From positions 62,001 through 126,000 of IMG/VR virus record IMGVR_UViG_3300035670_000008: 64,000 nt of DNA; one strand, written 5' to 3'. This document shows positions 41,066-60,392 of this stretch, in pieces. Both the position numbers and the translations under genes were made by a program. A model generated the notes under the pieces. It was not told the DNA's origin. It saw only the letters and a program-made list of their open reading frames with translations, and searched no databases. Every line of letters begins with the position of its first letter. Positions within the stretch are counted from its first letter, which is position 1.

Positions 41066-44000
41066 CTATTTGCGGTTGGCTTTCAGCCACGCGAAGTAGT
41101 CGTGGTCTACGAAGCCTTGGCACCCGGTCAGCCAGTTAATTACCCGAGGGTCAGAGCAATCTAAGAAGACGTCCTCGATGCGCTCGAAACGAGACAGCAT
41201 CACATAGAGGGCGGCTACTCGCTGTAACGCCTGCTCTTCGCCTAAGCGGTCTTCGCTAATCGAAATGATGCCAGGGCCTTTAATGGTTAACCCTTGGCAG
41301 CTATTAATCGTAGTCGCGAAATCTGCGTGGAGGGGTAGCTGGATGAACTTACCGCTCAGCGTGCCATCGGAAAAGTGCTTGCCCTCGAACTCATGGCTTT
41401 CAATACGAACGAGCCGATGTCCGAAGTCAACGATGACGTGGTCGTTGCCTAGTGACTTAATCTTGCCCCGACTACCATTAGCGGCCAGCAAGGTCTTGTT
41501 ACCACTTACAAGCTCGTATTTATTGTTACGTAGCTTGACAGGCATGTCAATGGCCAACGTCAAATTGGCAGGGATGGGTCGGAAGTCCCGGAGCCAATTA
41601 TCGTTGGTAGCGCCTTTCCGAATGACTAGACCGTTGTAGGTCTTCTTGGTGGTGACCATCGCCTGGGTATAACGCTCGTTCACTTCAATAACGCGACGGT
41701 TATTGTAGAAGATATGAACAGCGTTCTCAGGCGGGGTGACTACGCCGTTGATGCAGTCAGCAAAACGCTGTGCAATAACCCCAGTAATCATCCCAGTCTC
41801 ACGTAGGATGTCCAGGGCTTCCTGGTAAGCAGGGTCACCTTTCTGACGCACGCCGGTGTTTAGCTCAACGATGCTGAACGGACGGGTGGTTCCGTTGAAA
41901 CCATTGATTAGGCTGCCTTGGTTAGCTTTACAGCCGTTGATGAAGACATCTTGGTAGAACTTCACGGCTTTGTTATCGCTAACCGGCAGCTGACCACCGT
42001 CACCTACGAGCAGGATTTGGGCGAGTGGGTTCAGGCGTTTGATAATGTTGAAGACAACAAACAACACCCGTCCATCCACCATGGATACCTCGTCGATAAC
42101 TACGCGCAAGCGCTGACCGGTCTTGCAGGTCAAGCTTTGCTTAACGTAGTTATTCGTCAGAGACTTCATCACCATCGACTGAGCCCACTGCCAATCGGTG
42201 GTGCCAGGGGTGCGCTTCTCGCTGAAGTCAATACCCAAACCGAAACCACTGTTAAGCGTTCCTAGCGCACCGTAAGCGCCTTCCTGTAGGCTACCGCCGA
42301 GGTTCATCACGGAGATACCCGTAGAACCAAAGACGACGACCTTGTCACCAGCGGCTGCCCAACGGTGGATGGTTTCGGCAGTGATGAAGGTCTTGCCGGT
42401 ACCAGCCTTACCGGTCAAGAAGATGTTGTCACCCTGCTCCACCAGGGCTAAGAACTTTTTTTGACAGCTGGTTAGGTTGTCGATTTCGGCTAGCTCGATA
42501 GGTAAACCGCAGGTGGGTTCAGCGGCAGGAGCTTCGGAGATAGTAGGGATAGAAGGGAGAGTTTGCATAGTAGCCTCAGGGTTAGGAGTTTCTATGCTAT
42601 CTGCTTTTTTCCCTGCTTTCTCTTTACTTTCTTGTAGGTCAGTAATAACCGTTGTGTCAGCTACGCGAGCAATGTTTGCTTTGGAGCCTTTGGAGTGCCC
42701 GTCCCAAATGACGATACTCTTATGGCAACCATCGTGCATGACAGCATCACGTTGCGTATAGCTACCATTTACGCAGATAGTAGGGTAGCCTACGTTATTA
42801 CGACAACGATTTGCGTAGTAAACGGTTACTTCGCAGCCACGTCCTAGCAGATACTGCTGTACAGCAAGGTCAATACCTGTAGCATCACCAACTCGGAATG
42901 TAGCACCGGCTTGGATGTAAGCATCGATCTCTACCTTTGCTTTATCAGGTAGTTCTTTGATCGAACGGCTGCCGGAGACAACTACAACCGCACGCTTTGG
43001 CTCAACTGCTCCATCTATTTCCATTAGTTCGCCAAATATCCAGCAGTCTTTCTCTTCAGACCAATCGTAGAAAAGCTTGGTTACTTCGCCAGTGCTAGCT
43101 AGATAAAGCCAAGAAGCTTCAAACAAATTTACGATGTGCTGGCTGGGGCGGTAGCTAGGTAGTGAGTAATTAACTGCATAGACTACATCCCGAATGGCGT
43201 TCAAGAAGTCGCAGGCCTGTACGTTGTACAACCAAGGATGTTCTATGAAGGCACCTTTAGCTCCATGCTCAATGACGAAGCAGTAAGTGTCAGGGAACAG
43301 GTCGAAGTCTCCAGACCACGGCTGGCTCTGTTTACCGTCATACCAATCCTTGGCTTCTTGTAGTGCCTCGTTGAAACTATCAACAGCCCCTGTATTGCTG
43401 ATATCTGGGTAGCCGTAAAAGTAATCTACTAACCCAGTTTCCCAAAGGTAGACTAGATAATCTTCCTTAGTTAGGCTACATTCGCGGCTGGAGTTGCCAT
43501 AGGAGAATACCAATGTGTTAGCGAAGATATTATCCAGCTCGTCCATTGAGATAATGCCGTTGTGTAGCAGGTCGCCCATGGTACGTTTACCTTCAACGAA
43601 ACTATTAATATACAGCTCGTCGATATAAGGTTTGATACTTTCAACAAAAGCATCAGCAACCTTAATCCGGTTGGCGGTGGGCTTAACCTCTGTAGCTACC
43701 ACATCAATGGTAGCCCCGGAGGGCTCTACAGAAGCAGGGGCCTCTGTAGATTCAGCGGTGGGTTCGGCGTCTACAACGGCAGCGAAGCCGCCATCAGACG
43801 GAGGAGTTGGCTCCTTGGGAGTAGCAGGTACAGACCCACTACCAGAGTCGTCAGAGCCTTCGTCTTCAGGCTTCTCGTCGTTAGATGCCGAACCGTTCGT
43901 CGGCTCAACTCCCAACTGTACAGCCAGAGCAGCTAGCACACGCTCGGCAGCAGCGTCGCCAAACTCAGCCCGCACTTCATCAACGATGGAGCGGACTTTC

Positions 44001-50000: not shown

Positions 50001-53000
50001 GCTACAGTCATGCGGCGGAGTTTGCCGCCGAAGACATAGCCAGAGTCCCCTTTGTCCCGGTATTCCCCAAAGCCATGAATAGCGTGAACCTCAGCGATAG
50101 CCACGAACCAGTAGCGTTTGCCTGCCTCTGGCATAGAGGCGATAATACCTTTGGAGTTGATGGTGTTGTAGTCACCAACTGCTTTGGCTCCATTGGTACC
50201 ATTTAGCAACAACTCCTTGAGCGTGCCACGTTGCAAAGTCGCTTCGGTGGAGGCAGCACTATCCACAAAGGAGGTACAACGTACCTTACCTTCCTCTTTG
50301 TTCAGCTGGGCATACACCAACTGAACTTGAACGTTGCGGATGTGCTGGTTACGATACCAGCCGCTGGTACCATAGAAGCCGCCAGCGCAGGTGGGAGCAC
50401 CTTTCTGGTAGCTACGAGCCGCAAAGAACAAGACGGGCTCGACCTCACCCATCATATTACCGAGGGAGCCGAAGTTCAGCTTAGCTTCTTCAGGTGCTAA
50501 GTCTGGGGCTCCCAATTTCAAGAAGGAGTTCTCGTTAGTAAACTGTTCCCGCACAGGCAGGTTCAGATTACTTTCTATTATTTCCCCGTCTGCGTTACGT
50601 CGCATACCAACGAGGTAGACAGCGTAACCCAGGGTGTACTCGTTCATACCGGCGGCAGCATTAGCCAGCTCGGCCACAAACTCGCAACCGGGGAAGCATT
50701 CGATTAAAGAGTTGAGCATATTCCCTCCTTTACTATGCTCTCCGTTTGCTTTTTTCCCCGTATTCGTGGAACACGGTGGGGAAGCAGGTGTGGTACCTGC
50801 CGCAACACCCGATTGTTCGGGAACCCCATGGCTGAAGGCCACGTAGTCGGCCACTATACCAGATTTGGTCTTGCCGAGCGTAGCTTTAGCTTCAAGCAGA
50901 TACTGCTTAAAGCCGGCGTTGATAGCCCGGTCAGCCTCCAAATCCATGGCCCAACGAGCGAAGGACTCAACTACTACCTCTTCTTCTCGTTTTTCCTGTT
51001 TGTAGCTTGCAATCCAAGCTTTAGGAATATTACGGAAGTACTTGCGGGCGAAGCCATTCCCTTTAAGGCTGAGGTAGCCATGGAAGTGGAGGTAGTGACC
51101 AAACTCATGAAAGAGAGTCTTGGTCATCTCACGGGCGTTTCCTTCACCCCGCTTCACGATATAAATCGTGTTGGGCGCGGCAAACGAACCGTTGACCTCT
51201 TCGTGGCCGGTGTAGCGGCGGGCCATGGCGTAATCCATTTCATCGTCACGGTCAGCGACGATGATATTAACGCTAAAGCTGTCTTCTAACCAGTTACGCC
51301 ACTGGTAGAAGCGTTCCATACCAGCGGGGTTGTTATCAATCTTAGCTACGTCAATCTTATGGACAGCACAAATGCCAGGCTCTTTAGTTGTGGGGGCCTC
51401 GAACTCTTTAGCCATCTTGTAGATAACAGCTTCATCTACTTGACGAATCCGTTGCTTTTGACGTGCGCAGGCGAGTTCTGGTGTTCCTTGCAGCCAATGA
51501 ACCTCCCAATGACCTTTGCCTGCTTCGGTAATACGTCGGCGCCATTTAGAGTTAGAGTTACAGCCGTCGTAAACGATTTGCATTCCTAGCTTATTAGCGG
51601 CGGCAAACTGCTCTTGGATGTAAGTCCAAACTACTTCGATATCACCCTCTACTAAATCGGTGCCATAGATTTCTTTCTTGGCTGTGTCCCAATCGATGTA
51701 GTAGTAATCTTTGAAGTTTTCTTTAGCGTAGGTAGACTTACCTAACCCAGGCAACCCAACTAACATTATGTGGGTCTTAGGTTTAATACCTTGGCATAAA
51801 ACAATAGCTTCATCATGTGCAGCTACGTTAGCTAAATGCTCAGGCAGCGCCTTGCCTTTACCAATAGTACGCACATGCCGTGCCACATAATCATTAACCC
51901 GGCCAGCCTTAGGAGACACACGCACCGGAAAAGCTTTCATTTTGAAAGCCAACCCAGCATACATCTTGTCGCACTGCATCGTGTAGCGCATCCAATTGTA
52001 TGTTGTAAACTTATCCCGGTCGGTTTCATACTTGAAGGTATGGCTTAAGCAGAATGCCCGCACACCACCAGGGGTTTCATACACCTTAAACAAGTAGTCT
52101 GGGTTGTTCTTACACCAGTCGTGTAGTAAAGCATAGGCCTGACAGCGGTGGTTAATGGTAATACACTCCTCGGTATAGTGCCCATCGTCAGGGATATCCC
52201 AATCAAGCATCATTGTGTTTGATTCCCAGAAATAAATCTGCTTCTCTAGAGACAAGTCTTCAAGACGAAGAGCCATCTCTAGTTCACCAGCAGCACCGTA
52301 CTCGCTACGGGCGGCGGTGAGTACTTCTTGGGTAGAGCTGGCGATGTATGGGAGCTCGAATCCCGTGGCGCCCAACTGCCACGCAAACAGCTCGTCCATA
52401 ACCTCAGCCGCCTGTTCGTAGGCAGCCTGGGCCAGCATCAGCTGGTGATAATCCTCCTTCCACTCTTCGAGTGGGTCATACTTGGACTCATCAAAGTCCT
52501 CCTCGTATTCGTCGTCATACTCTTTTTCTTCCTCGTCGTCATACCCGTACAGGGTATCGTCGTAGAAGGCCAGCTTGGGCTCCTGGCGTTTGATGCCACC
52601 ATAGAGGTGGTTGAGGGCGCTGTGGCCATCAGCGCGCCGGTTGTATTTACCCTCCGCGATTAAGCGGCGGTAGTGAATAGACAAAGGCAGCTCTTCCTCA
52701 GTCCGCTGGGTGCGGAACTTGCCAGCTTTGGCTACGGGTGCCTCTGCCCCGGTAGCTAACTGGAACCGGGAGTTTCCTCGCCGGGTAGCGATTGACTTCA
52801 TCGCCCGCGTAACAGGCATAACGGGCAGCTGCCGGGATTTGGGTGGGGTCACCACTTTATAAGTGGTAATTTTGACTACCTGACCACCGCGATGCGCGTA
52901 GATGCGCAACCACTCGGAGTAGCCAAGCCGGTCGGCTTTCCAGACCGATTTAATTTTGCGCTGCTTACGTGCAGCAGCGCGTTGTTGGGTTGTCAGAGGA

Positions 53001-53785
53001 CAACGAAGTTTCCGAGAAGAATGTTTCTGCCGGCGCTTACGGGCAGCGCGGGCTAATTGTTGATTGATTTTGCGGGAATTTTGCATGACAATAGCACGAA
53101 CGGTTCGTGCGATAGGTGTAACGCTTGAGCCTTGGCGGAAGCGTTTTTGATAACCATTACGACGGGCACGCCGTAGCGCTGTGGTGTTTAACCCACGCCC
53201 GCCTGTGGAGGCGTTAAACGCCGCGCGGTTCATGATTTGACGAACCCGCTTGTGAGCGGCGCGGGCGGTGGCGACGTCACCAGTGCAATCGTCGGGAGTG
53301 AAGGCAGCAACAGTCAGGGTTGGGGCAGAGGCACGGACTTGCTTAGCAAGTTGTTCCGCCCATTCCCGACGGAGCTTAATATTGGCAACCGGTTGGATAC
53401 CAGCACCGGCAGGCAAAGTATTAAACTCTACCGGCAAGGCCAGTAGAAGTTGCATTACCAACAACCCATTCCAGCGGGTAATCCGAGCTGGTGGTAGGGC
53501 CAGCTGAGGGCGAACAGCTGCGTCAATAGCAGCATTGAAGTCAGTCAGGGCCTGCTGACGACGGGCTTCAGCATCAGCTGCCACCGGAGGTAGCAGCAGT
53601 TGAGCGGTAGCGGTGGTGGTGATAACAGCGGTTGGCTCATCCCATGGTCCGAAATCACACAACGGTATATCCCATGGGTCGGCGATATGAGTTTGCAATA
53701 CACCACCCATCAGAAAGGCAACATGGGCGGGGCTGACTGCAGCGGAAATAACATTAGCAGCAACGGAAAATTGTTTGAAAGACAT
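41066..53785 (-). CDS. 4239-aa multidomain protein: P-loop kinase, zincin, putative single-chain two-barrel RNA polymerase, SLOG domain, Pif1/RecD-like helicase
   Basis: GLPGLGKS; HEFGH; GKLRSSVVKG, RSP, AGDNDGD; SGSR..GDATGID..RD..WDG.SKG; GKAGTGKT, DEVSM, GDGGQLP, RQ, SCQGLT, YVMLSR. Confidence 0.8.
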   Translation of the reverse strand: MSFKQFSVAANVISAAVSPAHVAFLMGGVLQTHIADPWDIPLCDFGPWDEPTAVITTTATAQLLLPPVAADAEARRQQALTDFNAAIDAAVRPQLALPPARITRWNGLLVMQLLLALPVEFNTLPAGAGIQPVANIKLRREWAEQLAKQVRASAPTLTVAAFTPDDCTGDVATARAAHKRVRQIMNRAAFNASTGGRGLNTTALRRARRNGYQKRFRQGSSVTPIARTVRAIVMQNSRKINQQLARAARKRRQKHSSRKLRCPLTTQQRAAARKQRKIKSVWKADRLGYSEWLRIYAHRGGQVVKITTYKVVTPPKSRQLPVMPVTRAMKSIATRRGNSRFQLATGAEAPVAKAGKFRTQRTEEELPLSIHYRRLIAEGKYNRRADGHSALNHLYGGIKRQEPKLAFYDDTLYGYDDEEEKEYDDEYEEDFDESKYDPLEEWKEDYHQLMLAQAAYEQAAEVMDELFAWQLGATGFELPYIASSTQEVLTAARSEYGAAGELEMALRLEDLSLEKQIYFWESNTMMLDWDIPDDGHYTEECITINHRCQAYALLHDWCKNNPDYLFKVYETPGGVRAFCLSHTFKYETDRDKFTTYNWMRYTMQCDKMYAGLAFKMKAFPVRVSPKAGRVNDYVARHVRTIGKGKALPEHLANVAAHDEAIVLCQGIKPKTHIMLVGLPGLGKSTYAKENFKDYYYIDWDTAKKEIYGTDLVEGDIEVVWTYIQEQFAAANKLGMQIVYDGCNSNSKWRRRITEAGKGHWEVHWLQGTPELACARQKQRIRQVDEAVIYKMAKEFEAPTTKEPGICAVHKIDVAKIDNNPAGMERFYQWRNWLEDSFSVNIIVADRDDEMDYAMARRYTGHEEVNGSFAAPNTIYIVKRGEGNAREMTKTLFHEFGHYLHFHGYLSLKGNGFARKYFRNIPKAWIASYKQEKREEEVVVESFARWAMDLEADRAINAGFKQYLLEAKATLGKTKSGIVADYVAFSHGVPEQSGVAAGTTPASPPCSTNTGKKANGEHSKGGNMLNSLIECFPGCEFVAELANAAAGMNEYTLGYAVYLVGMRRNADGEIIESNLNLPVREQFTNENSFLKLGAPDLAPEEAKLNFGSLGNMMGEVEPVLFFAARSYQKGAPTCAGGFYGTSGWYRNQHIRNVQVQLVYAQLNKEEGKVRCTSFVDSAASTEATLQRGTLKELLLNGTNGAKAVGDYNTINSKGIIASMPEAGKRYWFVAIAEVHAIHGFGEYRDKGDSGYVFGGKLRRMTVAKDNTVVGDLTPGVDQQHTSQRMYCNNITLLQAADWVFDQKGINHFDTTALEAVVETVYGERILRYKKPYTGMYPVNAFSPRMDHGDPRLDMSDLERTRTCKYFEEHGGLLPGKPVPMEQETTPPPAAPAPAPIEVIPPVATEPEVTIDARTPKEAILDRVAELRAYYNSIQKITTDELVAVDWKAYTKDNFHTWINNNTVLQDGTTLLNHGLRPAAYACHAYLAACMGKDPAGNLGSLSGYEWKPVHFEALVRIIRSYIGEDYADQFIKWENNAIVLEESLDFRMTELGVVDGRRDRMFKGVIEVVWENYRDPETKKSQKLIHSIRGCDSFGGFMRLFYYGYVALLSGQLVASATTRNVSANLAAFHTKTDKFFPVTSDGTMNMSGPTLHAEANSYSIVGVMVNRDKDNNMVVYYPEPLVVENGKVKFKDFAGAGAGRLTKEYHSFRLRGQVKDSEIMQMLITRITGELSMGFSFNKGTARSGNICHVDLGRLKNLAPTWYEELRAVAEANGFGGDLAWMFANLNTKTAKGSKRLDLRAPTSVPSGCVIDFEGRPELERLIKEGGYGNEPNTIAMSTMPPDFYQVKGGSMAVGQVLPLEGTLQKVILGMTMTGIAGQAWHLGSKYSRPRGFVTKKMSYRSSKFDRANPLVIDMGTVLMGCEHTKTTEVEYGITYTYYRPTELQLVRKGDVLAQINTGAKLKDNQPYLRAAKQTRDFTGYLEWVRTYTTRTLETGTKAVEFVVEWAVTKAEDWGKLRSSVVKGMVASMHAESIFNNDNPNISPRVAELLLPQDVLKMDTTHCNIPYISHTLVFNKDCQDPRFLALREMGMDLNEKYDGRRHLDYLIEDPVGINSGAYDALQKAFAEFFGQQLTVTWADLEYGEYGNKLLELYLAAVDAKDDNGKPKGLMYDVTSANIGPVVDRKVIVGDKVFTRTVVLSDVDLLDPANHKGSRAEERANIFWFHLNGDGNVSVMQQRGWVLAGRADCDCPIYDVVLFESSTVEEAAGDSHQLGAALRSNYRLMPNKAIREVMEGQAVRALESPYRAKLLCAMYDGSMDYDSTLLETITLANWQEVTSRGVKSWEAVPNEEGMARVRELLVDVDLSNPDDDALFGKVCHALRNVVIRVVTSTPRKLTFDHIKTKAPDYEDYEWDYDSYDCDYDEWEDEYDDSNIVRHIDIYTPMLFNLNSLKSGEECLETASGIFFYQYLITLLAGQLPSAIDVNRLRGKLRALTESSSNAKNIGGDRMIGGKALSLPNIPTWMFLVVEGGMQYDLMKQYVRGYERPVFDATTGQFTSEMTKYSLDRDCPTFETALRLGLAAYPTPIINHETRSPMPDGSIGLVTILPYTRKAIESFYYAPSDPTYIVYKDRKPLLDENNQPVVQLDVIYGATRLMSPLAHNLMTAGDNDGDGTYGVILPWTCGHTLQMLLSLVTTAESAVAFRAGAVGQRPGESPWATLIRKECYWGDYMMPKNGWSRLRIVENLSSFVKVDPKDGALQGAINPIKVTIKGKEVEVDSYADTNIRAREVFTTMVGVSYGIYQLGEGVINIVTALKKCGVEIPDSLKWAASDNAFQIVAIVAEIYETILGAYTKPTWRMWVDYVQAVSRPEFVDTGLGVKVPRPNYVTMFRYNDVKSIEEFIAAVEAMGCNGTAGMEIAECFNLLAEVKAWEKGMLYGTEADASVGLEGFIKYNSFAQFEMTRGKWVGYFKGYLNGENDWDENKVICHLQVTRQLFHWYALGNPVAGVTIPEEVYTESHVLWVLRRMFQKSVLGDVCKYLPGTGYEFMDDTGARPAMDYFRYKLELRHSTPEVEGEMEIKPIMEVGPTTQTAQEIANALSWNTAEASAPTANDEPAAELVIDNGLTHEDPFEGMDDGRWDEEELDLAGSAAFDDYEDPDIVLSSDKFEPSSAPVPTQVIDPAPTAPAPVAPAPAPAPAPAPIVAPTPVVTQVAEEAEVTAVPIVDVLEAAAESDATVAMLVAIAEQVKAEERAKAERTARQQKVRSIVDEVRAEFGDAAAERVLAALAVQLGVEPTNGSASNDEKPEDEGSDDSGSGSVPATPKEPTPPSDGGFAAVVDAEPTAESTEAPASVEPSGATIDVVATEVKPTANRIKVADAFVESIKPYIDELYINSFVEGKRTMGDLLHNGIISMDELDNIFANTLVFSYGNSSRECSLTKEDYLVYLWETGLVDYFYGYPDISNTGAVDSFNEALQEAKDWYDGKQSQPWSGDFDLFPDTYCFVIEHGAKGAFIEHPWLYNVQACDFLNAIRDVVYAVNYSLPSYRPSQHIVNLFEASWLYLASTGEVTKLFYDWSEEKDCWIFGELMEIDGAVEPKRAVVVVSGSRSIKELPDKAKVEIDAYIQAGATFRVGDATGIDLAVQQYLLGRGCEVTVYYANRCRNNVGYPTICVNGSYTQRDAVMHDGCHKSIVIWDGHSKGSKANIARVADTTVITDLQESKEKAGKKADSIETPNPEATMQTLPSIPTISEAPAAEPTCGLPIELAEIDNLTSCQKKFLALVEQGDNIFLTGKAGTGKTFITAETIHRWAAAGDKVVVFGSTGISVMNLGGSLQEGAYGALGTLNSGFGLGIDFSEKRTPGTTDWQWAQSMVMKSLTNNYVKQSLTCKTGQRLRVVIDEVSMVDGRVLFVVFNIIKRLNPLAQILLVGDGGQLPVSDNKAVKFYQDVFINGCKANQGSLINGFNGTTRPFSIVELNTGVRQKGDPAYQEALDILRETGMITGVIAQRFADCINGVVTPPENAVHIFYNNRRVIEVNERYTQAMVTTKKTYNGLVIRKGATNDNWLRDFRPIPANLTLAIDMPVKLRNNKYELVSGNKTLLAANGSRGKIKSLGNDHVIVDFGHRLVRIESHEFEGKHFSDGTLSGKFIQLPLHADFATTINSCQGLTIKGPGIISISEDRLGEEQALQRVAALYVMLSRFERIEDVFLDCSDPRVINWLTGCQGFVDHDYFAWLKANRK
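50717..50764 (-). promoter_or_regulatory. Putative internal promoter motif + RBS + in-frame ATG inside giant ORF
   Basis: AATACGGGGAAAAAAGCA identical to motifs at 14360 and 32760; AAAGGAGGGAAT-ATG (Met1023). Confidence 0.7.
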
Positions 53786-54085
53786 AGGTTTAATCTCCTA
53801 CTTGACTGAGTTTGGTTTGGATTGAAACAACGTCCATGCTTTTAAGCGGAGCTAAGGACTGAACCGATTGGATTTATTTAATGTCTTGTCCAACTCAGAC
53901 CTGCCCAAGCAAAAACCAACGCGGCTGTGCGCCTTAGCAGACATCAGGTCGGCTTGCGCCGCGCCATTGGTATCTACGTATCGGTTGTCTTGGGTAATAA
54001 AAAAACCCCAGGTATAAAACCTGGGGCGGAGCTAACAGAACCAACTCTTGTTAGGAGTGGGTCTGCTAGCTCCAAAGAAGTGAAA

Positions 54086-55036
54086 TTAGACTTGGGTTAG
54101 GTCGTAACCCGGGTCGTTGTCCACCGGGCGGTCCGGGATGTTGAATACCGTATCCCCCGAAGGGGCGGCATCCACAACACCGCCGACACCAGAAGTGGTG
54201 GTAGTAACCGTAGTGACCGGAGGAGCGGTGGGCGCCACAGGTTTAATATTCCATACCTCCGGGCGGTACCCGATTTCGACCAACACTTCCCGTATCCGCG
54301 TGAAGTCCTCGGGCTTGACATCCGTTGGAAGGTTGCAAGCCTTCTTGATAATCACCAACTTATCCACGACAGATGCGTTGATGTCCGGGTAGCGCTCCAA
54401 CACTTTCGTGCGGGCGTTCCATTCCGGGGTAGCTTGCATACCTTTGTCCTTGGTAGACTTCGTCGACTTCGTCGACTTCGTCGACTGGGTATTGGAGGAG
54501 GTATTGGAGGAGGTATTGGAGGAGGTATTGGAGGAGGTATTGGAGGAGGTGGTCTTCTTAGGTGGGGCTTGACTTGGTTCTAACACCAAGTTGAACTTAC
54601 CTTGTTGGTAAGCCTCCATAATTTCCTTAGTGGATTTACCATCCAGGAAGGTTTCCCATACTACGTCCATCTGCTCCCGCAATGCTTTGGCCTCTTTGGC
54701 CTCAGCTTCCAGCTTTTCACACTGGATGGCGAAACCCGCCGACCGCTCGATCGCGGTCTTGGTCCGCTGCTTCCACGCAACTTCATTGTCGCGTTCCTCC
54801 TTATTTACCTCTGTCAAGGTTTCCAAGTTTTTCGCTATTGCCTCCGCTGTCACTACCTTTTCAGGTGTGTTATCTGTGGCTACGGTTGGGGCCACCTTAC
54901 AATACTGCGAAGGCAAGCCCCGCTTGCAAGAAGGACAACCGCAGCCACCCACCGGAGCCGCCTTGGGAGCAGCAGGGGCAGCGGGGGCAGCTTTAGGGGC
55001 GCGAGAGATTTGAAGACCTAAGAAATTGAAAGGCAT
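54086..55036 (-). CDS. Hypothetical protein with SSNT and STK tandem repeats
   Basis: ATG at 55036 follows a leader motif shared with the 59973 gene; CGCPSC; 12-bp and 9-bp repeats at ~54455-54550. Confidence 0.75.
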   Translation of the reverse strand: MPFNFLGLQISRAPKAAPAAPAAPKAAPVGGCGCPSCKRGLPSQYCKVAPTVATDNTPEKVVTAEAIAKNLETLTEVNKEERDNEVAWKQRTKTAIERSAGFAIQCEKLEAEAKEAKALREQMDVVWETFLDGKSTKEIMEAYQQGKFNLVLEPSQAPPKKTTSSNTSSNTSSNTSSNTSSNTQSTKSTKSTKSTKDKGMQATPEWNARTKVLERYPDINASVVDKLVIIKKACNLPTDVKPEDFTRIREVLVEIGYRPEVWNIKPVAPTAPPVTTVTTTTSGVGGVVDAAPSGDTVFNIPDRPVDNDPGYDLTQV

Positions 55037-55655
55037 AGTGTATCCTGGCACTTAATGGCAGTTCCCGCCTAGTGTTAATAAACCACCTTCTTTAAACGTC
55101 TTACAGGTGGCAAAAGACGAGCATGACCTGTTATTTTGAGTCGTTGTGCTTCCCGACTACTTACGCCAGTTCAGATACAGTACTGGGAACTCTCCACAAA
55201 TGTTCTACGTGTTGTGTCTACACGTTCCTATTCATTCGATGAGCTAGGTCGACTCATCCCCTTTCATACAGCCGGGTCTGGCTTACGTTTCATCCCACAC
55301 ATGCCCGCAGCAAAGCGGTTGTCTAGGGCAATAAAAAACCCACAGAACAACTTAAAAGTATTAATATAAGCAAACCTAAGTGCGGCTGTTCGCGGCTGTT
55401 GATTCGTGTCTTATCAATCCCCACCGCGGCTGTTAGACTCTGCCTAAGCAAAATCCAACGCGGCTGTTAGCTAGGGATGACCGTAGCTCAGCCGAAGACA
55501 CAGCCACGCTGCGCTACGTCCTTTACTCTCTATCCATGGTCCTGTGGACCCCGATCTTGCGAACGGTTTTATAGATGGAGGTTAAAGAAGCGCAGCGTAA
55601 CGCGGCTATCCCTATTAAATAAAAAACCCCTCCGAAGAGGGGAAGTTTATTTATA

Positions 55656-56099
55656 TTAGAAGCCGAATTCAGCCTCAATATCGAACATAAAATCCTCTAC
55701 ATTGGATTCGATGACAGCTCCGAATTGGAGCGTGGCTGCTAGCTGGTTTAGTTTGTCTTCAGACCGAGCTTTGGCAACTCGTAATGCCTCAGCGGCAGCT
55801 TGAACAGCTGCTTTCTTTTCGATTAAAGACTCAGCTCGTAATACTTCTGCTTTTTGTAAAGCAGAGTATTCACGCGCTTGCTCATTAGTATTTGCGGTTT
55901 CTTTGGTTAGACGACCATGCAGGGCATCCAACTTTTCCTCCACTGTTAGGGTAGGAGCCGCCGCGGGAGCGGTGACTTCCTCTACCGGGGCTACCGGTAG
56001 ATTAGCAGAAGAAGAAGAAGAAGAAGAAGAAGAAGAAGAAGAAGAAGAAGAAGAAGAAGAAGAAGAAGAAACAACGTAGCCAAAGTTGAAAACTGTCAT
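55656..56099 (-). CDS. Coiled-coil protein, paralog B, with Ser21 tract
   Basis: Highly similar to 56560-56970. Confidence 0.85.
   Translation of the reverse strand: MTVFNFGYVVSSSSSSSSSSSSSSSSSSSSSANLPVAPVEEVTAPAAAPTLTVEEKLDALHGRLTKETANTNEQAREYSALQKAEVLRAESLIEKKAAVQAAAEALRVAKARSEDKLNQLAATLQFGAVIESNVEDFMFDIEAEFGF
56007..56069. repeat. (AGA)21 in-frame trinucleotide tract
   Basis: Encodes 21 Ser (TCT). Confidence 0.95.
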
Positions 56100-56174
56100 A
56101 GTAAACCCTAGTCCGGGGAAAAGAAGAACCGGCTGTCTAGGGTATAAAAATACCCTCCGAAGAGGGTATTATAG

Positions 56175-56447
56175 TTATGTTTTAGCCACTCCGCCTTTAT
56201 TGGCTTGGTGGCACAGGGTTCGTACCCTGTTAACTAGCTCAAGATTGTCGTCTTGAGCGGCGGCTACCATTACATAGCCGAGTAGACCGATATACATCAG
56301 CTTCCTCTTCTCGAGGAGATCAGGGGACACCTGCTCCTCGGGTCTGAAGTTGATGGTATACCGGTAGTCGGTATACCCTGCGTCGGCGGCGGCGCCTAAC
56401 AGGGAATAAGCAAGTTTGAAGAACCGACGATAGTCTTTTGCGCGCAT
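56175..56447 (-). CDS. Hypothetical protein
   Basis: GGAGGT RBS before ATG 56447. Confidence 0.65.
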   Translation of the reverse strand: MRAKDYRRFFKLAYSLLGAAADAGYTDYRYTINFRPEEQVSPDLLEKRKLMYIGLLGYVMVAAAQDDNLELVNRVRTLCHQANKGGVAKT

Positions 56448-56559
56448 AGGTACCTCCGTAGCGGTTGTTAAAGACATTAAAATACCCCCTTGCGGGGAGT
56501 ACTTTAATACCTTGGTTAGACGACCATGTGGGCGCTAACCAAGGTAGAAAGTGGGTGAC

Positions 56560-56970
56560 CTAGAAACCAAACTCTTCCTCGATGGAGGACATAAAGTCCT
56601 CCACGTTGGATTCGATGACAGCTCCATATTGGAGCGTTTGGGACAATTGGGTCAGTTTAGCTTCAGACCGGGCTTTGGCAACCCGTAGTGCCTCGGCGGC
56701 GAGCTGAATTTGGGCTTTCTTCTCAATCAACGCTTCAGCACGAAGCAGCTCTGCTTTTTGTAAGGCAGAGTATTCACGGGCTACTTCATTCGCGTCTGAA
56801 GTTTCTTTAACAAGCCGCTGGTGCAGCCCGTCTAGTTTTTCCTCCACTGTTTGGGTCACCACCGGGGCGGTGACTTCCTCTACCGTTTCCACCTCCATAG
56901 GGGTAGGTACCTCTTTGTAGGTAAATAAGTTAGAAAAGTAGCCGACGGAAGTAGATTGTTGAATTGTCAT
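56560..56970 (-). CDS. Coiled-coil protein, paralog A
   Basis: TVEEKLD...AREYSALQKAE...IESNVEDFM...EFGF shared with paralog B. Confidence 0.85.
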   Translation of the reverse strand: MTIQQSTSVGYFSNLFTYKEVPTPMEVETVEEVTAPVVTQTVEEKLDGLHQRLVKETSDANEVAREYSALQKAELLRAEALIEKKAQIQLAAEALRVAKARSEAKLTQLSQTLQYGAVIESNVEDFMSSIEEEFGF

Positions 56971-57188
56971 GATAAATCCCTAGGCCGGGGAAAAAGTGAA
57001 CCGGCTGTCTAGGGTATAAAAAACCCCTTTTTATAGGAAGTTCCCTAGTCCTAACTGGCGCCCTCGCGGGCTATCCAGGTTTGATAAGGTACTTTTCCTA
57101 TAAAAGAAGGCAACCCTCTTCTGCTACTACTTCGGTCGCACCCCAAGCGTAGCTAGCTTCCACTGTCACTGGAAGCGAAGAGAGTTAT

Positions 57189-58508
57189 TTAGTAGAACAA
57201 CCATTCGGATGTTGGCAGGTTATCCTCGTCACCATCCATATCTCCGTAGTCGTCCGCCCCTGGTTCGGAGTCAGGGTCATAGTCGTCAAATGCCTCCCAT
57301 CCTTGTGGGGAATGTAGCTCTATTTCTAGAGCATTCTCCCACCCAAAGAGGGATTCTTCTATCCGCCCCGCCCGGATATTACTCCGGTGGTTATGGGTTT
57401 CGACGATCAAGGCCCCGTCCTCCATATAATACGGAAGACGAACCGGAGCCGCCCATTCACCGACGTTGCGTCCCACAACCATGTGCCGACGAGGCCGCCC
57501 ATGCGACCGTTGCATGAAGTACGGTATAGGCTCCGCCACACCGTACCCAGCTTCTGGCGCGTCGCCTACAACGGTTATTTCGTAGCCGTTGTATTCGACC
57601 AGATGGCCGTAGCTTGGTGGTAGAGTTTGGGCGTGGTCAACCCAAGCCTTGACCGTAGCCAAGTTCCGCAGCACCCCATCCGCGTCATGCGGGGATAGGA
57701 ACATGCGGAATTCCACAGTTTGGGAGTTGCACATATTGACCGCTACGTAGCGGTCGTTGGATGCACCATATTTGTAGGCACACCAACGGTTGCCTTTACG
57801 GCCAGCCAATGCTTCTACTAACTTACGGTGCTCACATATCCATTCCACCAGACTTACCCACACGTTGTCGGGCAGGGAACGACGGCTGACATGAACGTGC
57901 ATTCCTACACCCGACGTTTCCGTCAAGGTATTATTGGCGGATAGCAGTTTGTTAAAGGAGTCTGCTAGCTCCTTGATTTTTGTAACCATTTGGTCGTATG
58001 TGTAGGGGAGGGTCACATACTCCCCATCGACAGTGGAATCGGACTTAAAGATCCCCATACCCAATAGAGGATATAGGTCCATCAAACTGTGATTGGAGTG
58101 GTTAAACTCCAACTCAATCCCGTATAGGGTGTCCGTGGAGTTAGTTACCTCCTCCCGTTTTTTGTCTTTGGCTAAAGTCAGGATATTACGACTGTAATTC
58201 CAAACCTTGGCTTCTGGTTTTTCGATATCCCCCGTAGCCGCGACCATCTCTACAGGGGACTTCTTGATAGGGTAGGCGTTGGGAAGTAACCCCAAAACGC
58301 TGTCACCAGCATCTATCAACTCAACTAGAGCTGATAGGACAGGAGAATGACCTCCCTCTAACCAATCCGCATGGGTTAGGGTGTCAAACCCTGCGGACAT
58401 ATATCCGCTCTCTGTTACCTCAATTCGGAAGGTCCCGAACTGATTCTGCCCGAGGCAGATAACGATGGTGGGAGCAGACACGGAAGTGGTGGAGATAAAA
58501 TTAGACAT
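57189..58508 (-). CDS. Putative amidoligase (COOH-NH2 ligase type 2)
   Basis: YGIELEF, DST, EYVT, GMHVHVSR, RY.AVN, TVEFRMF. Confidence 0.8.
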   Translation of the reverse strand: MSNFISTTSVSAPTIVICLGQNQFGTFRIEVTESGYMSAGFDTLTHADWLEGGHSPVLSALVELIDAGDSVLGLLPNAYPIKKSPVEMVAATGDIEKPEAKVWNYSRNILTLAKDKKREEVTNSTDTLYGIELEFNHSNHSLMDLYPLLGMGIFKSDSTVDGEYVTLPYTYDQMVTKIKELADSFNKLLSANNTLTETSGVGMHVHVSRRSLPDNVWVSLVEWICEHRKLVEALAGRKGNRWCAYKYGASNDRYVAVNMCNSQTVEFRMFLSPHDADGVLRNLATVKAWVDHAQTLPPSYGHLVEYNGYEITVVGDAPEAGYGVAEPIPYFMQRSHGRPRRHMVVGRNVGEWAAPVRLPYYMEDGALIVETHNHRSNIRAGRIEESLFGWENALEIELHSPQGWEAFDDYDPDSEPGADDYGDMDGDEDNLPTSEWLFY

Positions 58509-58609
58509 GGTATTTAACTGGGGGTGAAAAACAATAAACCCCAGTCTTGTGTCCGTGCTCTAAGCACCTGTGTCACGCTGCAGACCAATCAACTGCAACA
58601 TGAGGACAA

Positions 58610-58657
58610 TGCCGGTAAAAGGGACTCGAACCCTTACTTGCGTACCTACGTACCGGC
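58610..58657 (-). ncRNA. tRNA minihelix-like element (acceptor stem + T arm)
   Basis: GCCGGTA...AAGGG-TTCGAGT-CCCTT-T-TACCGGC-A. Confidence 0.5.
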
Positions 58658-58755
58658 TGTTTAGCACATAAAAATAACCCTCCTAAGGAGGAGGGTCAAA
58701 GAGTGTAGGTATTTATACAAACAAGTGCCCGCCCCTACACAGGCGGGCAAGGGCC

Positions 58756-58956
58756 TTACTTGGACTGCTCTTGGTTAGCAGTCCACACCAGGTAAACCCC
58801 GGTGATGACTGCGCCATTGACGGCAATCCCAGAGAGTACAAGTAAGGCCCAAAGAATGAGTCCACGCCAATCGAAGGGCGTAAACCCTTCGAGTTGGCGG
58901 TACTCAGACTTGGATAACTTTTTCATAGTTCTCCGTGGGTTTAACAATACAGGCAC
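58756..58956 (-). CDS. Small membrane protein (start probably 58926)
   Basis: Hydrophobic segment; GGAG RBS. Confidence 0.6.
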   Translation of the reverse strand: MPVLLNPRRTMKKLSKSEYRQLEGFTPFDWRGLILWALLVLSGIAVNGAVITGVYLVWTANQEQSK

Positions 58957-59115
58957 CCCTGCCTGGAGCTTATATAGACACCTCGACCTACTACGCTTCG
59001 TAGCGCACGTAGCGGTTGTCTAGCTCAATAAAAAACCCACCCCCGTAAGGGAGTGGGTGGTACGTAGCTTGTTTATACTCCCCTACGTTAGGAGTGTGGG
59101 TAAGGCCTTAGTCTA

Positions 59116-59430
59116 CTAAGGCTTTACCCAACCATCACTTTGCCAGAATCGGAGTTCCGATTCTGTGTCCTTTTTAATGCAGTACCCATGGGCGAATGGG
59201 TCCTCCCCCAGAGCAAGCAAAAATGAAATGTGCGCGCCTTCGCGCACATTTTCCTCTTTGTGGGTTTCGATGTAGACCTCGCGGTCTATGTTTGACACCC
59301 ACTGTTCGGGGCTAACCCCCGCACACTCAGCCGCCAGGAGGACGTTTGCCCCCAACGACAGACGATATAAATCCACTTCTTTTTCCACCTCTTGCGAGGT
59401 GGAGAACATGTTTATTTTGGGTTGGTACAT
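59116..59430 (-). CDS. Hypothetical protein
   Basis: AAGGA RBS; upstream part of the track ORF overlaps a terminator. Confidence 0.6.
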   Translation of the reverse strand: MYQPKINMFSTSQEVEKEVDLYRLSLGANVLLAAECAGVSPEQWVSNIDREVYIETHKEENVREGAHISFLLALGEDPFAHGYCIKKDTESELRFWQSDGWVKP

Positions 59431-59566
59431 GATGATCTTTTCCTTTTGACTAACGGTGAATGGGTTGTTAGACCCAATAAAAAACCCACCCCTTGCGGAG
59501 TGGGTAGGTAGTGCAGGTATTATTAACGTCCCCCTGCATAGGGACGAGCAAGAGCTTAGAGGGGGT

Positions 59567-59707
59567 TCAGCACCCACCCCCTAGCTGCTTGCAGATGCTG
59601 TCTACTCGCTGAGCAGGATTAACCTGCTCTTGGAGCTTCGGAGCCATGGCCCCGAAAGATGAGAGAAGAATAGCAGCAAACACTACGAGAATAGAGAAAC
59701 GTACCAT
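59567..59707 (-). CDS. Small secreted/membrane peptide (46 aa, not in track)
   Basis: MVRFSILVVFAAILLSSFGAMA signal-like start; own motif and terminator unit. Confidence 0.55.
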   Translation of the reverse strand: MVRFSILVVFAAILLSSFGAMAPKLQEQVNPAQRVDSICKQLGGGC

Positions 59708-59814
59708 GATAGAAACACAGCGGTGTGAAAGGTATTGCCGCTGTCCTCACTAAATAAAAAACCCCTCTTGCGAGGGGTCTGTAGAGGTCATCATCTACAA
59801 GAGGGGTCTTTTAC

Positions 59815-59973
59815 TTAGAAGCGGGAAGGTAAGGTCACCCTTACCATCCCGATGAGCGAGTCCGCCTTATCGAATGCGCGCGCCCGTAGGCGCACGCAAA
59901 CCAAACAATCCGCCAGCTGGGCTTGGAGCCCAGCCTGGCGGGTGAGCTTGCGGGCGGTACGAATCTTAGACAT
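59815..59973 (-). CDS. Small basic peptide (52 aa, not in track)
   Basis: AGGA RBS; leader motif shared with the 55036 gene. Confidence 0.5.
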   Translation of the reverse strand: MSKIRTARKLTRQAGLQAQLADCLVCVRLRARAFDKADSLIGMVRVTLPSRF

Positions 59974-60082
59974 AATTGTCCTGGCACTCACGTAGTTCCC
60001 ACGAAGCCGTTAGTTCTGATAAGCCCGGTCTAGCTTATGACTTAGCCGTTACCAAACCCGGAATTTCTCAATTCCGAGGCGG

Positions 60083-60097
60083 GGTATAGGGGAAAAT
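60083..60097 (+). repeat. 15-bp direct repeat, copy 2
   Basis: Identical to 29813-29827; part of inverted repeat GGGGTATAGG/CCTATACCCC (60081-60158). Confidence 0.85.
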
Positions 60098-60392
60098 CAC
60101 ATAATTGGTCTCATTTAGAACCGCGAGTAATTTTTGTTGGAGCTCCGTCCTATACCCCCTGGTTATTACTGGAGGGGAGGTTCGTCTAGAATTATTCGTC
60201 AAATGCTGAAAGTCTTATGCTGCAATCGTTCTAGCGATTTCGTTAGCTCCCCACCTAGGCGAACACTCCGCGTAAACAAAAGAAAACCCCGCTGGCGTTC
60301 ATACATCAGCGGGGTTTTCCTAAGACCTACTAGTAAGCTCTTTGTAGGGTTTGTTATAGTAGGTATATTGTTAACCTTCTCTATCGTACAAT

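What the first reader, a model, noticed from the sequence alone, without database searches (positions are those of the whole stretch)
53895..59790. Class I cassette: terminator immediately followed by ACA(A/G)CCG, repeated about 10 times
Seen on minus: hairpin (UUCG/GCAA-type loops)-TTTTTAT-N6-9-ACA(A/G)CCG at ~53982, 55316, 55603, 56130, 56462, 57002, 58654, 59013, 59462 and 59739 (some are variants). A 29-bp repeat also lies at ~53900 and ~55440, and several leaders begin with a hairpin starting at GCCG. Inference: fused terminator-promoter joints making each gene an independent, shuffle-ready unit transcribed first.
Basis: partly seen in the sequence, partly recalled or inferred. Interest (0 to 1): 0.66.

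Follow-up and report, generated by a model that had tools for sequence, protein, structure and literature searches.

The report
Terminator-plus-start-signal joints in a jumbo phage
A 216-kb cyanophage-like virus has a run of short genes, each ending in a terminator hairpin whose T-tract leads 9-11 bases later into a conserved start motif; distant relatives keep this layout, so it is a real regulatory design, but who reads it and when is not shown.

Summary
On the minus strand, a T5-7 tract plus AT is followed 7-9 nt later by (CTAG)ACA(A/G)CCG. Eight of the ten tracts sit behind a strong GC hairpin with a GCAA or UUCG-type loop. The strict pattern occurs 7 times in the whole 216,563-bp virus record, all inside the cluster, and 0 times in the control.

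A looser pattern finds 13 joints between window 38.5 and 59.8 kb. The regulon therefore also covers the 4239-aa gene and the small genes downstream of it.

Relatives at 22-50% protein identity keep the architecture. Their hairpins differ in sequence, while the motif is kept or replaced by a lineage variant. Cultured Microcystis phages Ma-LMM01 and MaMV-DC carry hairpin-TTTTTCYTTCTAGTG.

My best reading is a compact phage-specific promoter, or re-start signal, fused to each intrinsic terminator. Transcription would start at ACA. No sigma-70-type -10/-35 pair fits.

The polymerase is unknown. Two giant proteins carry an invariant GDxDGD loop, but fold prediction did not show an RNA-polymerase fold.

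"Transcribed first" is not supported. In published Ma-LMM01 RNA-seq, the syntenic joint-type genes are low-level, middle-class genes.

The parts
59738..59780 (-). Joint 1: hairpin (GCAA loop), T6, AT, N9, ACAGCGG. Precedes a 46-aa ORF (59707-59567).
   Evidence: -15.3 kcal/mol, z -3.4
59462..59505 (-). Joint 2: hairpin (GCAA), T6, AT, N8, ACAACCC. Precedes a 104-aa ORF (59430-59116).
   Evidence: -16.7, z -3.0
59013..59058 (-). Joint 3: hairpin (TTAC), T6, AT, N8 ending in CTAG, ACAACCG. Precedes a 56-aa ORF (58926-58756).
   Evidence: -19.2, z -3.4
58654..58698 (-). Joint 4: hairpin (CCTT), T5, AT, N7, ACAGCCG. Precedes a ~150-nt leader and the 439-aa amidoligase-like gene (58508-57189).
   Evidence: -15.7, z -4.2
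57002..57030 (-). Joint 5: T6, AT, N7 (CCCTAG), ACAGCCG, without a significant hairpin. The upstream gene's terminator lies separately at about 57105-57125. Precedes the 136-aa ORF (56970-56560).
   Evidence: z 0.07
56462..56506 (-). Joint 6: hairpin (CGCAA), TTTTAAT, N7, ACAACCG. Precedes a 15-nt leader with GGAGG and a 90-aa ORF (56447-56175).
   Evidence: -17.8, z -3.4
56130..56172 (-). Joint 7: hairpin (TTCG), T5, AT, N7 (CCCTAG), ACAGCCG. Precedes the 147-aa ORF (56099-55656), a paralogue of the 136-aa ORF.
   Evidence: (-12.9, z -5.2)
55603..55642 (-). Joint 8: hairpin (TTCG), T6, AT, N9, ATAGCCG. Precedes a ~270-nt unit with no convincing ORF.
55346..55602 (-). Non-coding unit carrying four further ACAGCCGC(G/A) copies (first bases 55467, 55433, 55399, 55389) and one copy of the 28-nt repeat (55440-55467).
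55316..55345 (-). Joint 9: T6, AT, N8 (CCCTAG), ACAACCG, without a significant hairpin. Precedes a ~290-nt conserved leader and a 316-aa ORF (55036-54086).
   Evidence: (z -1.0)
53982..54027 (-). Joint 10: hairpin (TTTAT loop), T7, AT, N8, ACAACCG. Precedes a ~200-nt leader, which holds the second copy of the 28-nt repeat (53901-53928), and the 4239-aa gene.
   Evidence: (-17.4, z -4.1)
41066..53785 (-). Giant gene of 4239 aa driven by joint 10. Domains: AAA_33/polynucleotide-kinase-like (about aa 670-800), an HExxH motif, an invariant AGDNDGDG loop (aa 2666) and a C-terminal Dda/PIF1-like helicase.
38539..40140 (-). Four variant joints downstream of the giant gene: hairpin, T5-6, (G/A)CTAC or CTCGGGC, then ACAGC(T/C). 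T-runs start at 40126, 39820, 39494 and 38562.
59815..60330 (-). Head of the cluster. It holds a hairpin plus T-rich tract plus ACGCGG at about 60320-60268, a TATGTGATT...CCCTATACCCCGCC box conserved in L039, then a leader and a 52-aa ORF (59973-59815).

Best explanation
The region is an array of monocistronic transcription units in a ~216-kb tailed phage. The phage is distantly related to the Microcystis phages Ma-LMM01 and MaMV-DC (Fukuivirus).

Each unit ends in an intrinsic terminator, a GC hairpin plus U-tract. The same T-tract, with the AT that follows it, is the upstream AT-rich part of a compact start signal of about 23 nt: T5-7 AT, N7-9 (often ending CTAG), then ACA(A/G)CCG.

I infer that transcription of the next unit begins at the ACA, so the 5' leader hairpins that include ACA or GCCG are transcribed.

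The signal is not a sigma-70 -35/-10 promoter. It is read by phage-specified machinery: either a phage RNA polymerase or host polymerase redirected by a phage factor. Which of the two is not established.

Shown:
- the anatomy and its statistics;
- conservation of the design in relatives;
- lineage-specific variants of the motif.

Inferred:
- that the motif is a promoter, and where transcription starts;
- the timing, most likely delayed-early or middle rather than immediate-early.
For: - Genome-wide restriction of the pattern to one 21-kb minus-strand block, with near-zero controls.
- Strong hairpins at 8 of 10 joints. Strong intrinsic terminators are otherwise rare in the genome.
- The two joints without a hairpin keep the T-tract, the AT and the spacing, so the T-tract belongs to the start signal as well.
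- Leaders can be as short as 15 nt, with GGAGG directly after the motif (joint 6; L044 and L048). This leaves no room for a promoter downstream of the motif.
- No TAnnnT lies at 16-19 nt after TAGACA. Sigma-70-like sites are not enriched: 6 found against 11.8 expected.
- Orthologous joints in L038, L039 and L040 (giant protein 46% identical) have unrelated hairpin sequences but keep ACA(A/G)CCG.
- L041 (35% identical) has 8 joints with ACAGCnGC at the same spacing. L044, L047 and L048 (24-28% identical) have a T-rich tract plus ACAGCC.
- L051, MaMV-DC and Ma-LMM01 have the same design with other motifs.
- 5' stems pair ACA with a downstream TGT in three leaders. A tRNA-like stem starts right after ACA and shows one compensatory change.
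Against: - No RNA data exist for this virus, so no 5' or 3' end has been seen.
- No T7-like RNA polymerase was found, although the control genomes did not ring either. PHROGs gave no virion RNA polymerase hit.
- The GDxDGD giant proteins gave no RNA-polymerase fold.
- In Ma-LMM01, the first unit of the block has a hairpin plus motif with no upstream gene on that strand and with sigma-70-like promoters further upstream. This fits an attenuator model just as well.
- Ma-LMM01 joint-type genes are weakly expressed.
- The 5' leader hairpins are not individually significant.
Confidence: 0.55

Rival explanations
1. Attenuator array. Host RNA polymerase starts at sigma-70-like promoters at the head of the block. 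Every gene is preceded by a leaky intrinsic terminator. The conserved motif is an RNA-level element of the next cistron's 5' region (processing site, stabilising stem, translation or antitermination element), not a promoter.
For: - The head of the block in this window and in L039 carries a conserved TATGTGATT...CTATACC box.
- Ma-LMM01 has three repeated sigma-70-like promoters upstream of a hairpin-plus-motif that precedes the first gene, gp067.
- Ma-LMM01 gp064-gp067 are expressed at low levels, as expected behind terminators.
- In L044 and L048 the motif pairs with sequence around the Shine-Dalgarno site.
Against: - Ten strong terminators in series (-13 to -19 kcal/mol) would leave almost no transcript for the 4239-aa gene.
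- The T-tract, AT and spacing are kept at two joints that lack a hairpin. This is not expected if only the RNA downstream of a terminator matters.
- The constant 9-11 nt spacing to the T-tract holds across lineages.
Confidence: 0.2
2. Host (or phage-sigma) holoenzyme promoter of the -10-only kind. Either TAGACA/TAAACA, or the TAT that follows the T-tract, acts as a -10-like hexamer with a T-rich upstream element. Transcription would start a few nt downstream.
For: - The head-of-cluster box CCCTATACCCCGCC aligns with the joint's CCCTAGACA(A/G)CCG.
- L044 has TATACAGCC.
- The authors of the Ma-LMM01 study called TAGNNN part of an early promoter.
- The phage encodes a cyanobacterial group-2-like sigma factor at window 22900-23907.
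Against: - The last position of the hexamer is A or C, not the T needed by sigma-70 region 2.
- With TAGACA as the -10, the start would fall inside or just before the Shine-Dalgarno site in joint 6, L044 and L048. It would also exclude the 5' arms of the conserved leader stems.
- With TATnnn as the -10, only 4-5 nt remain before ACA.
- No -35 element is present.
- The L041 and L048 motifs lack a TA at the required place.
Confidence: 0.15
3. Recombination or cassette-mobility sites. The hairpin plus 7-mer would be the target of a recombinase that shuffles cassettes, as with integron attC sites.
For: - Variable cluster content between relatives.
- A duplicated unit.
- Alternative contigs that abut joints at about 56155 and 57112.
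Against: - The hairpins are short, perfect GC stems with tetraloops and a T-run, which is terminator anatomy. They lack the attC R''/L''-L'/R' layout.
- The only integrase lies 48 kb away, at window 5251-6393.
- The motif is always oriented with, and placed directly before, a Shine-Dalgarno site and ATG.
- Duplication and deletion can be explained by homologous recombination between the repeated joints.
Confidence: 0.05
4. Repetition by descent only. The joints look alike because the units arose by recent tandem duplication, without function for the motif.
For: Joints 5 and 7, with their leaders and ORFs, are clear duplicates.
Against: - The other units encode unrelated proteins.
- Their hairpins and spacers differ, while the 7-mer and its spacing are kept.
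- The motif is kept in relatives whose proteins are only 24-50% identical.
Confidence: 0.03

Closest known systems
Ma-LMM01 / MaMV-DC (Fukuivirus) leftward block gp067-gp063, and its published transcriptome (PMC5780444)
   Same: - Synteny: a giant GDxDGD protein next to the head and portal genes, a few genes, then a leftward block of small genes and a large GDxDGD-containing gene.
- Seven joints of hairpin, T-tract, 3-4 nt, conserved motif, short leader, Shine-Dalgarno site and ATG.
   Different: - The motif is C(C)TT(C/T)T(A/G)GTG, not ACARCCG.
- The large gene is 1673 aa, not 4239 aa.
[quoted passage not shown]
- Protein identity is only about 23%.
Pre-early/early regulons of phages with virion RNA polymerases (P23-45 gp96 and gp64, PMC10770324; N4; phiKZ and AR9, PMC7598289)
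   Same: - A cluster of short genes of unknown function.
- A strongly conserved phage-specific start motif that is not sigma-70-like.
- Terminators with a conserved context.
- Giant proteins with a DxDGD-type loop encoded nearby. In those phages a second polymerase gene is driven by the first regulon.
   Different: - No polymerase fold or homology could be shown here.
- The N4 hairpin promoter geometry (3-nt loop, start 11 nt from the loop centre; from my own knowledge of the N4 literature) does not fit.
- Timing in the cultured relative is middle, not pre-early.
Host-takeover modules made of many small operons, each with its own promoter and terminator (for example the Bacillus phage SPO1 terminal-redundancy module, or the T4 early region; recalled from established literature)
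   Same: Many short genes without database relatives, each an independent unit bounded by a promoter and a rho-independent terminator.
   Different: - Those promoters are strong host sigma-A/sigma-70 promoters, separated from the preceding terminator by variable distances.
- Here the start signal is not sigma-70-like, and it shares the T-tract with the terminator at a fixed spacing.
Gene-end / intergenic / gene-start junctions of Mononegavirales (stop-start transcription); an analogy only
   Same: A U-tract that ends one mRNA, then a very short spacer, then a conserved start sequence for the next mRNA, repeated along a row of genes in the same orientation.
   Different: Those are RNA genomes read by an RNA-dependent polymerase that enters at a single site. 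Nothing here shows obligatory sequential transcription.

Membership tests
Rho-independent (intrinsic) terminators | GC-rich stem-loop that is significantly more stable than shuffled sequence | tested here: met
   8 of 10 joints: -12.9 to -19.2 kcal/mol, z -2.8 to -5.2. The joints at 57023 and 55338 fail.
Rho-independent (intrinsic) terminators | Run of at least 4-5 T directly after the stem, on the coding strand, downstream of a stop codon | tested here: met
   T4-T7 at all ten joints, each 15-90 nt behind the stop of the upstream ORF.
Rho-independent (intrinsic) terminators | RNA 3' ends in the U-tract | not testable with these tools
   No RNA run holds the sequence.
Sigma-70-type promoter | A -10 TAnnnT element 16-18 bp downstream of a TTGACA-like -35 element, upstream of the start | tested here: not met
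   The scan found 6 sites against 11.8 expected, none at the joints. Manual check of all ten joints found no TAnnnT at 14-20 nt after TAGACA.
T7-like single-subunit RNA polymerase promoter | Contiguous conserved block of about 17-23 bp that ends a few nt after the start, beginning with a purine | tested here: inconclusive
   The block T-tract, AT, N7-9, ACA(R)CCG is about 23 nt, and the only variable core position is a purine. The start site is unknown.
T7-like single-subunit RNA polymerase promoter | Cognate T7-like RNA polymerase gene in the genome | tested here: inconclusive
   PF00940 gave no match in the 216-kb record, but the control genomes did not ring either. No PHROGs RNA polymerase hit among the giant and other large (about 1000 aa or more) ORFs scanned.
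N4-type virion RNA polymerase hairpin promoter | 5-7-bp stem with a 3-nt loop, start about 11 nt from the loop centre, N4-like virion polymerase present | tested here: not met
   Loops are 4-5 nt, the loop centre lies about 25-30 nt from ACA, and stems are 6-10 bp. No N4-like virion polymerase family hit. The N4 geometry is recalled from the literature.
Two-barrel virion RNA polymerase systems (crAss-like gp66, P23-45 gp96) | Giant protein with a DxDGD metal-binding loop | tested here: met
   LGDYDGDS is invariant in 54 aligned family members out of 99 representatives. AGDNDGDG is invariant in the 4239-aa family.
Two-barrel virion RNA polymerase systems (crAss-like gp66, P23-45 gp96) | Double-psi beta-barrel fold around the loop; similarity to solved RNA polymerases | tested here: inconclusive
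   AF2 models had pLDDT 53 and 73, but only about 55 at the loop, and were mostly helical. No RNA polymerase appeared in PDB by Foldseek or VIA-align, or by profile.
Two-barrel virion RNA polymerase systems (crAss-like gp66, P23-45 gp96) | Motif-bearing genes are the first transcribed | not testable with these tools
   No RNA for this virus. In Ma-LMM01 the syntenic genes are middle class.
Integron-type gene cassettes | attC sites with paired core sites, an adjacent intI gene, promoterless cassettes | tested here: not met
   Terminator anatomy, not attC. The integrase is 48 kb away.

The most novel reading that the evidence does not exclude
The joints are stop-start junctions read by a phage-encoded giant polymerase of a new kind, one of the two GDxDGD protein families. 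The enzyme would terminate at the hairpin and U-tract and re-initiate about 10 nt downstream at ACA without leaving the DNA. This would give a polar gradient along the row of genes, a DNA-phage analogue of mononegavirus gene junctions. It would also explain why Ma-LMM01 runs three temporal classes without changing host transcription.
Probability: 0.1. Interest if true: 0.9.

Novelty: new variant of a known kind. Interest (0 to 1): 0.58.

Why it matters
The design is shared by a broad and almost unstudied clade of large phages: 99 representative giant-protein clusters in public data. That clade includes the cultured bloom-controlling Microcystis phages.

For those phages, the published view is that all transcription uses host sigma-70-like promoters and that no phage-specific motif exists. 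The conserved joints found here in Ma-LMM01 and MaMV-DC contradict that view. They also make the question directly testable in a culturable system.

If the signal is a promoter, it defines a new promoter class whose T-tract is shared with a terminator. It also points to unknown transcription machinery, possibly the GDxDGD giant proteins.

If the signal is an attenuator or processing element, it defines a new mode of graded expression.

Either way, these are compact, insulated, self-contained expression units.

Tried and rejected
- DNA search of the cluster against 50,697 phage records found no match.
- The exact joint pattern in IMG/VR gave 27 single hits, about the number expected by chance from a rough estimate of the collection's size. 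It did not identify any informative relative.
- The amidoligase-like protein as a probe in viral contigs found nothing.
- An RNA evidence search found only four DNA metagenome runs from one study. Laying them showed strain variation only.
- The ESM Atlas feature search on the 4239-aa core gave no usable hit.
- Profile searches of both GDxDGD regions against PDB sequences returned only coiled-coil or chance hits.
- hhalign between the two GDxDGD families aligned only the loop, at probability 2.9%.
- Two AF2 models of the 5112-aa protein region gave no polymerase match in PDB, in the wide VIA search or in the Atlas.
- Rfam gave nothing at gathering level in the cluster.
- I considered TAGACA as a -35 element, as the Ma-LMM01 paper does for TAGNNN, and rejected it. 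No -10 follows, and in Ma-LMM01 the implied -10 would overlap start codons.
- I considered N4-type hairpin promoters and integron attC sites, and rejected both (see Membership tests).
- The TV-Pol element reported in Ma-LMM01 (PMC2579912) is an integrated mobile element unrelated to this locus.
- The large representative search was used once, after the word search and the family scans had left the giant protein unexplained.

Full report
**Context**

The window is bases 62,001-126,000 of a 216,563-bp IMG/VR virus record, estimated 96% complete. The record encodes a tail sheath, tail fibres and other myovirus-like structural genes. It also encodes RecA, ThyA, PhoH-PIN, a split PolA, an integrase and TnpB. 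It carries a sigma factor that is closest to cyanobacterial group-2 RpoD.

The record has three giant ORFs, of 4239, 5112 and 6943 aa. The DNA occurs only in four subsurface or soil metagenome DNA runs from one study, and no RNA run holds it.

Its nearest cultured relatives, at about 23% identity in the 5112-aa protein, are the Microcystis phages MaMV-DC and Ma-LMM01, genus Fukuivirus.

**The observation**

The common form on the minus strand has five parts in order:
- a GC-rich hairpin;
- a T5-7 tract;
- AT;
- 7-9 nt, often ending in CTAG;
- ACA(A/G)CCG.

Seven joints are exact and three are one-base variants (ACAGCGG, ACAACCC, ATAGCCG).

Eight hairpins are strong, at -12.9 to -19.2 kcal/mol and z -2.8 to -5.2. 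Their loops are of the GCAA, UUCG, UUAC, CCUU or UUUAU kind. Two joints (57023 and 55338) have no significant hairpin, yet keep the T-tract, the AT and the spacing.

The strict pattern occurs seven times in the whole genome. All seven are in the cluster and on the minus strand, against zero for the control pattern.

A looser composite pattern gives 15 minus-strand and 3 plus-strand hits. Thirteen of these lie in window 38.5-59.8 kb, against 1 and 0 in reversed sequence.

Strong intrinsic terminators are otherwise scarce in this genome.

The 28-nt repeat is confirmed: 53901-53928 and 55440-55467, 93% identical. It consists of ACAGCCGCG plus a small hairpin and TTTTGCTT(A/G)GGCAG.

**Extent**

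The same kind of joint precedes the 4239-aa gene (joint 10). With the variant 'T-run, (G/A)CTAC..., ACAGC(T/C)', it also precedes small genes downstream of that gene, with T-runs at 40126, 39820, 39494 and 38562.

The leftward block runs from a divergent region at about 60.39 kb to a bidirectional terminator at about 34.05 kb.

**What each unit contains**

Downstream of each motif lies a leader of 15 to about 290 nt, a Shine-Dalgarno site and an ORF. In order, the units are:
- ORFs of 46, 104 and 56 aa;
- a 439-aa amidoligase-like protein;
- ORFs of 136, 90 and 147 aa;
- one unit with no ORF but four more ACAGCCGC copies;
- a 316-aa ORF;
- the 4239-aa gene.

The 136-aa and 147-aa units are duplicates, including the promoter and leader (75% identity). 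None of the small proteins has an informative family hit.

**Comparative evidence**

This is the strongest result.
- Homologues of the 4239-aa protein at 46% identity (L038, L039, L040) have joints whose hairpins are unrelated in sequence, while T-run, N, (CTAG)ACA(A/G)CCG is kept.
- A relative at 35% identity in the 5112-aa protein (L041) has eight joints of hairpin, T-run, N7-10, ACAGCnGC, in a syntenic block that again contains amidoligase-like genes.
- Relatives at 24-28% identity, with 39-40% GC (L044, L047, L048), have hairpin, T-rich tract, ACAGCC, 2-4 nt, AAGGAGG, ATG.
- L051 has the same design with TTTTGTGGGC-N5-TTAACACCCAC.
- MaMV-DC and Ma-LMM01 have seven to eight joints of hairpin plus TTTTTC(C)TT(C/T)T(A/G)GTG in the syntenic block.

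Across 25 hairpin-associated joints, the T-tract sits at -14 to -8 relative to ACA. That alignment was selected with a pattern, so the core columns are not independent evidence.

Structure-only conservation of the hairpin points to a terminator. Sequence conservation of the element behind it, together with lineage-specific switches of that element, points to a start signal recognised by something that evolves with the phage.

**Where transcription probably starts**

A sigma-70 reading fails, for three reasons:
- There is no -10 element at the right distance after TAGACA, and no enrichment of sigma-70-like sites.
- With TAGACA as a -10, the start would fall in or at the Shine-Dalgarno site in joint 6 and in L044 and L048.
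- With the TAT behind the T-tract as a -10, only 4-5 nt remain before ACA.

Three leaders form 5' stems that pair ACA with a downstream UGU. The amidoligase leader begins directly after ACA with a tRNA-like element, an acceptor-like 7-bp stem plus a GGGUUCGAGUCCC T-arm. This element recurs in L041 with one compensatory change and one wobble change.

These stems are individually weak (z about -1 to -1.6), so the placement of the start at ACA is an inference. The only variable core position, A or G, would suit a purine at or next to +1.

**Who reads it**

This is not established.
- No T7-like polymerase domain was found, though the control was uninformative.
- PHROGs gave no polymerase hit.
- Two giant-protein families carry an invariant GDxDGD loop. 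The 5112-aa family has LGD(Y/F/N)DGD(S/T) in all 54 aligned members, from 99 representatives. The 4239-aa family has AGDNDGDG. Ma-LMM01 gp080 and, less certainly, gp064 share these loops.

The GDxDGD loops recall the two-barrel virion and non-virion polymerases of crAss-like phages and P23-45, where a giant protein carries the polymerase and reads a conserved motif at clustered pre-early genes.

The test nevertheless failed or was inconclusive. AF2 gave pLDDT 53 and then 73, but only about 55 at the loop, and the models were mostly helical. Neither Foldseek nor VIA-align found a polymerase, and profile searches of PDB sequences found none. The only structural match is the Ma-LMM01 homologue.

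The 5112-aa protein also has a PLD/HKD-like nuclease motif near its N-terminus. I therefore do not file these proteins as polymerases.

**Timing**

In Ma-LMM01 RNA-seq (PMC5780444, Table S3):
- The joint-type genes gp064-gp067 are class B5 ('middle'). Their log2 FPKM is 1.6-2.8 at 1 h and 6.6-7.9 at 3 h, which is among the lowest of the middle genes.
- The early class is the operon gp054-gp063. It lies immediately downstream, behind the seventh joint, 6.7 copies of a 42-bp repeat and a sigma-70-like promoter.

That paper predicted promoters with BPROM and stated that no phage-specific motif exists. The joints are not mentioned there. Ma-LMM01 is a distant relative with a different motif, so this comparison is indicative and not decisive.

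**Cassette behaviour**

Gene content of the block differs greatly between relatives, while the flanking genes stay syntenic. One unit is duplicated.

In the source metagenomes, some contigs diverge from the window at about 56155 and 57112, both at joints or terminators. Run X3 has no contig over 56039-57033. A gap in contigs proves nothing by itself.

Homologous recombination between the repeated joints would explain all of this. No dedicated recombination system is indicated.

**Verdict**

The feature is real, highly non-random and evolutionarily conserved. It is best described as an array of insulated single-gene units whose intrinsic terminators are fused, through a shared T-tract, to a compact phage-specific start signal.

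It is a new variant of a known kind: phage takeover-type clusters with one promoter and one terminator per gene. It has three unusual points:
- the fixed fusion geometry;
- a motif that is not sigma-70-like and switches between lineages;
- unknown machinery that reads it.

The main open alternatives are an attenuator or RNA-element reading (0.2) and a -10-only holoenzyme promoter (0.15).

Noticed in passing
G000 126233-141571 (-) = L005:233-15571; outside the window, just right of it: A 5112-aa ORF with an invariant LGDYDGDS loop (aa 3815-3821) and a PLD/HKD-like nuclease motif (about aa 524-591). Its family has 99 representative clusters of 3000-5400-aa proteins in public data, including Ma-LMM01 gp080. 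The function is unknown, and no RNA-polymerase fold was shown.
   Followed up: partly
window 41066-53785 (-), aa 2666-2673: The 4239-aa protein has an invariant AGDNDGDG loop in a core region that is conserved (about 53% identity to the window protein) across its three family members. It also has a kinase-like AAA_33 domain, an HExxH motif and a Dda-like helicase. Ma-LMM01 gp064 has EGDADGDQ in a similar local context, though the similarity is not significant. This core region was not folded.
   Followed up: partly
window 58611-58657 (-): A tRNA-like element (7-bp acceptor-like stem plus a GGGTTCGAGTCCC T-arm) sits at the very 5' end of the amidoligase-gene leader. It has a weak Rfam mascRNA hit (18.7 bits, E = 5). 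It is conserved in L041 (about 29917-29968) with one compensatory and one wobble change.
   Followed up: partly
window 55037-55322 (-); L039 8419-8707; L041 32085-32327: A ~290-nt 5' leader precedes the last small gene before the giant gene. It is conserved in a mosaic fashion at the nucleotide level, even though the encoded proteins show no BLAST similarity. It contains several hairpin modules and is a candidate structured regulatory RNA.
   Followed up: partly
window 55044-55069 (-) and 59978-60000 (-); also L039 7427-7437 region and L041 (two copies): A repeated box, GG(C)GGGAACTRCNNTNAGTGCCAGG, lies 8-12 nt upstream of start codons. It may be a translational operator or a ribosome-binding structure.
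   Followed up: no
window about 40060, 39785, 39465, 38475, 37125, 34985 (-): A conserved AAAGAGC(G/A)GA(A/T)GGAG box lies ahead of the start codons of the small genes downstream of the giant gene.
   Followed up: no
window 55346-55602 (-): This unit has no ORF but carries four extra ACAGCCGC copies. The analogous position in Ma-LMM01 (record 43271-43551) holds 6.7 copies of a 42-bp repeat ahead of the early operon. These could be decoy or enhancer arrays.
   Followed up: partly
window 55997-56080 (-) and 54449-54562 (-): Long in-frame simple repeats occur inside cluster ORFs: a run of TCT (Ser) codons in the 147-aa ORF, and 12-nt and 9-nt tandem repeats in the 316-aa ORF. Metagenome contigs break at these repeats.
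   Followed up: no
window 56039-57112: Strain-level variation in the source metagenomes. Run X3 has no contig over 56039-57033. Loose ends at 56155 and 57112 appear in several runs. A second haplotype occurs within 57281-57702.
   Followed up: partly
window 22900-23907 (-): The phage encodes a sigma factor with regions 1.2, 2, 3 and 4. Its best match is the cyanobacterial RpoD/SigA-family model, below that model's cut-off. This hints at a cyanobacterial host.
   Followed up: partly
window 10895-12103 (-), 5251-6393 (-), 6485-6558 (+): A TnpB (OrfB_IS605 / Cas12f-like TNB) gene, a tyrosine integrase and a tRNA-Ala(TGC) gene lie in the left part of the window.
   Followed up: no
L055 (Ma-LMM01) 8880-11310 and 3760-3790; L054 (MaMV-DC) 13184-24380: The cultured Microcystis phages carry seven to eight hairpin-TTTTTC(C)TT(C/T)T(A/G)GTG joints. 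The published promoter analysis does not describe them, and some precede small ORFs that are unannotated in MaMV-DC.
   Followed up: yes
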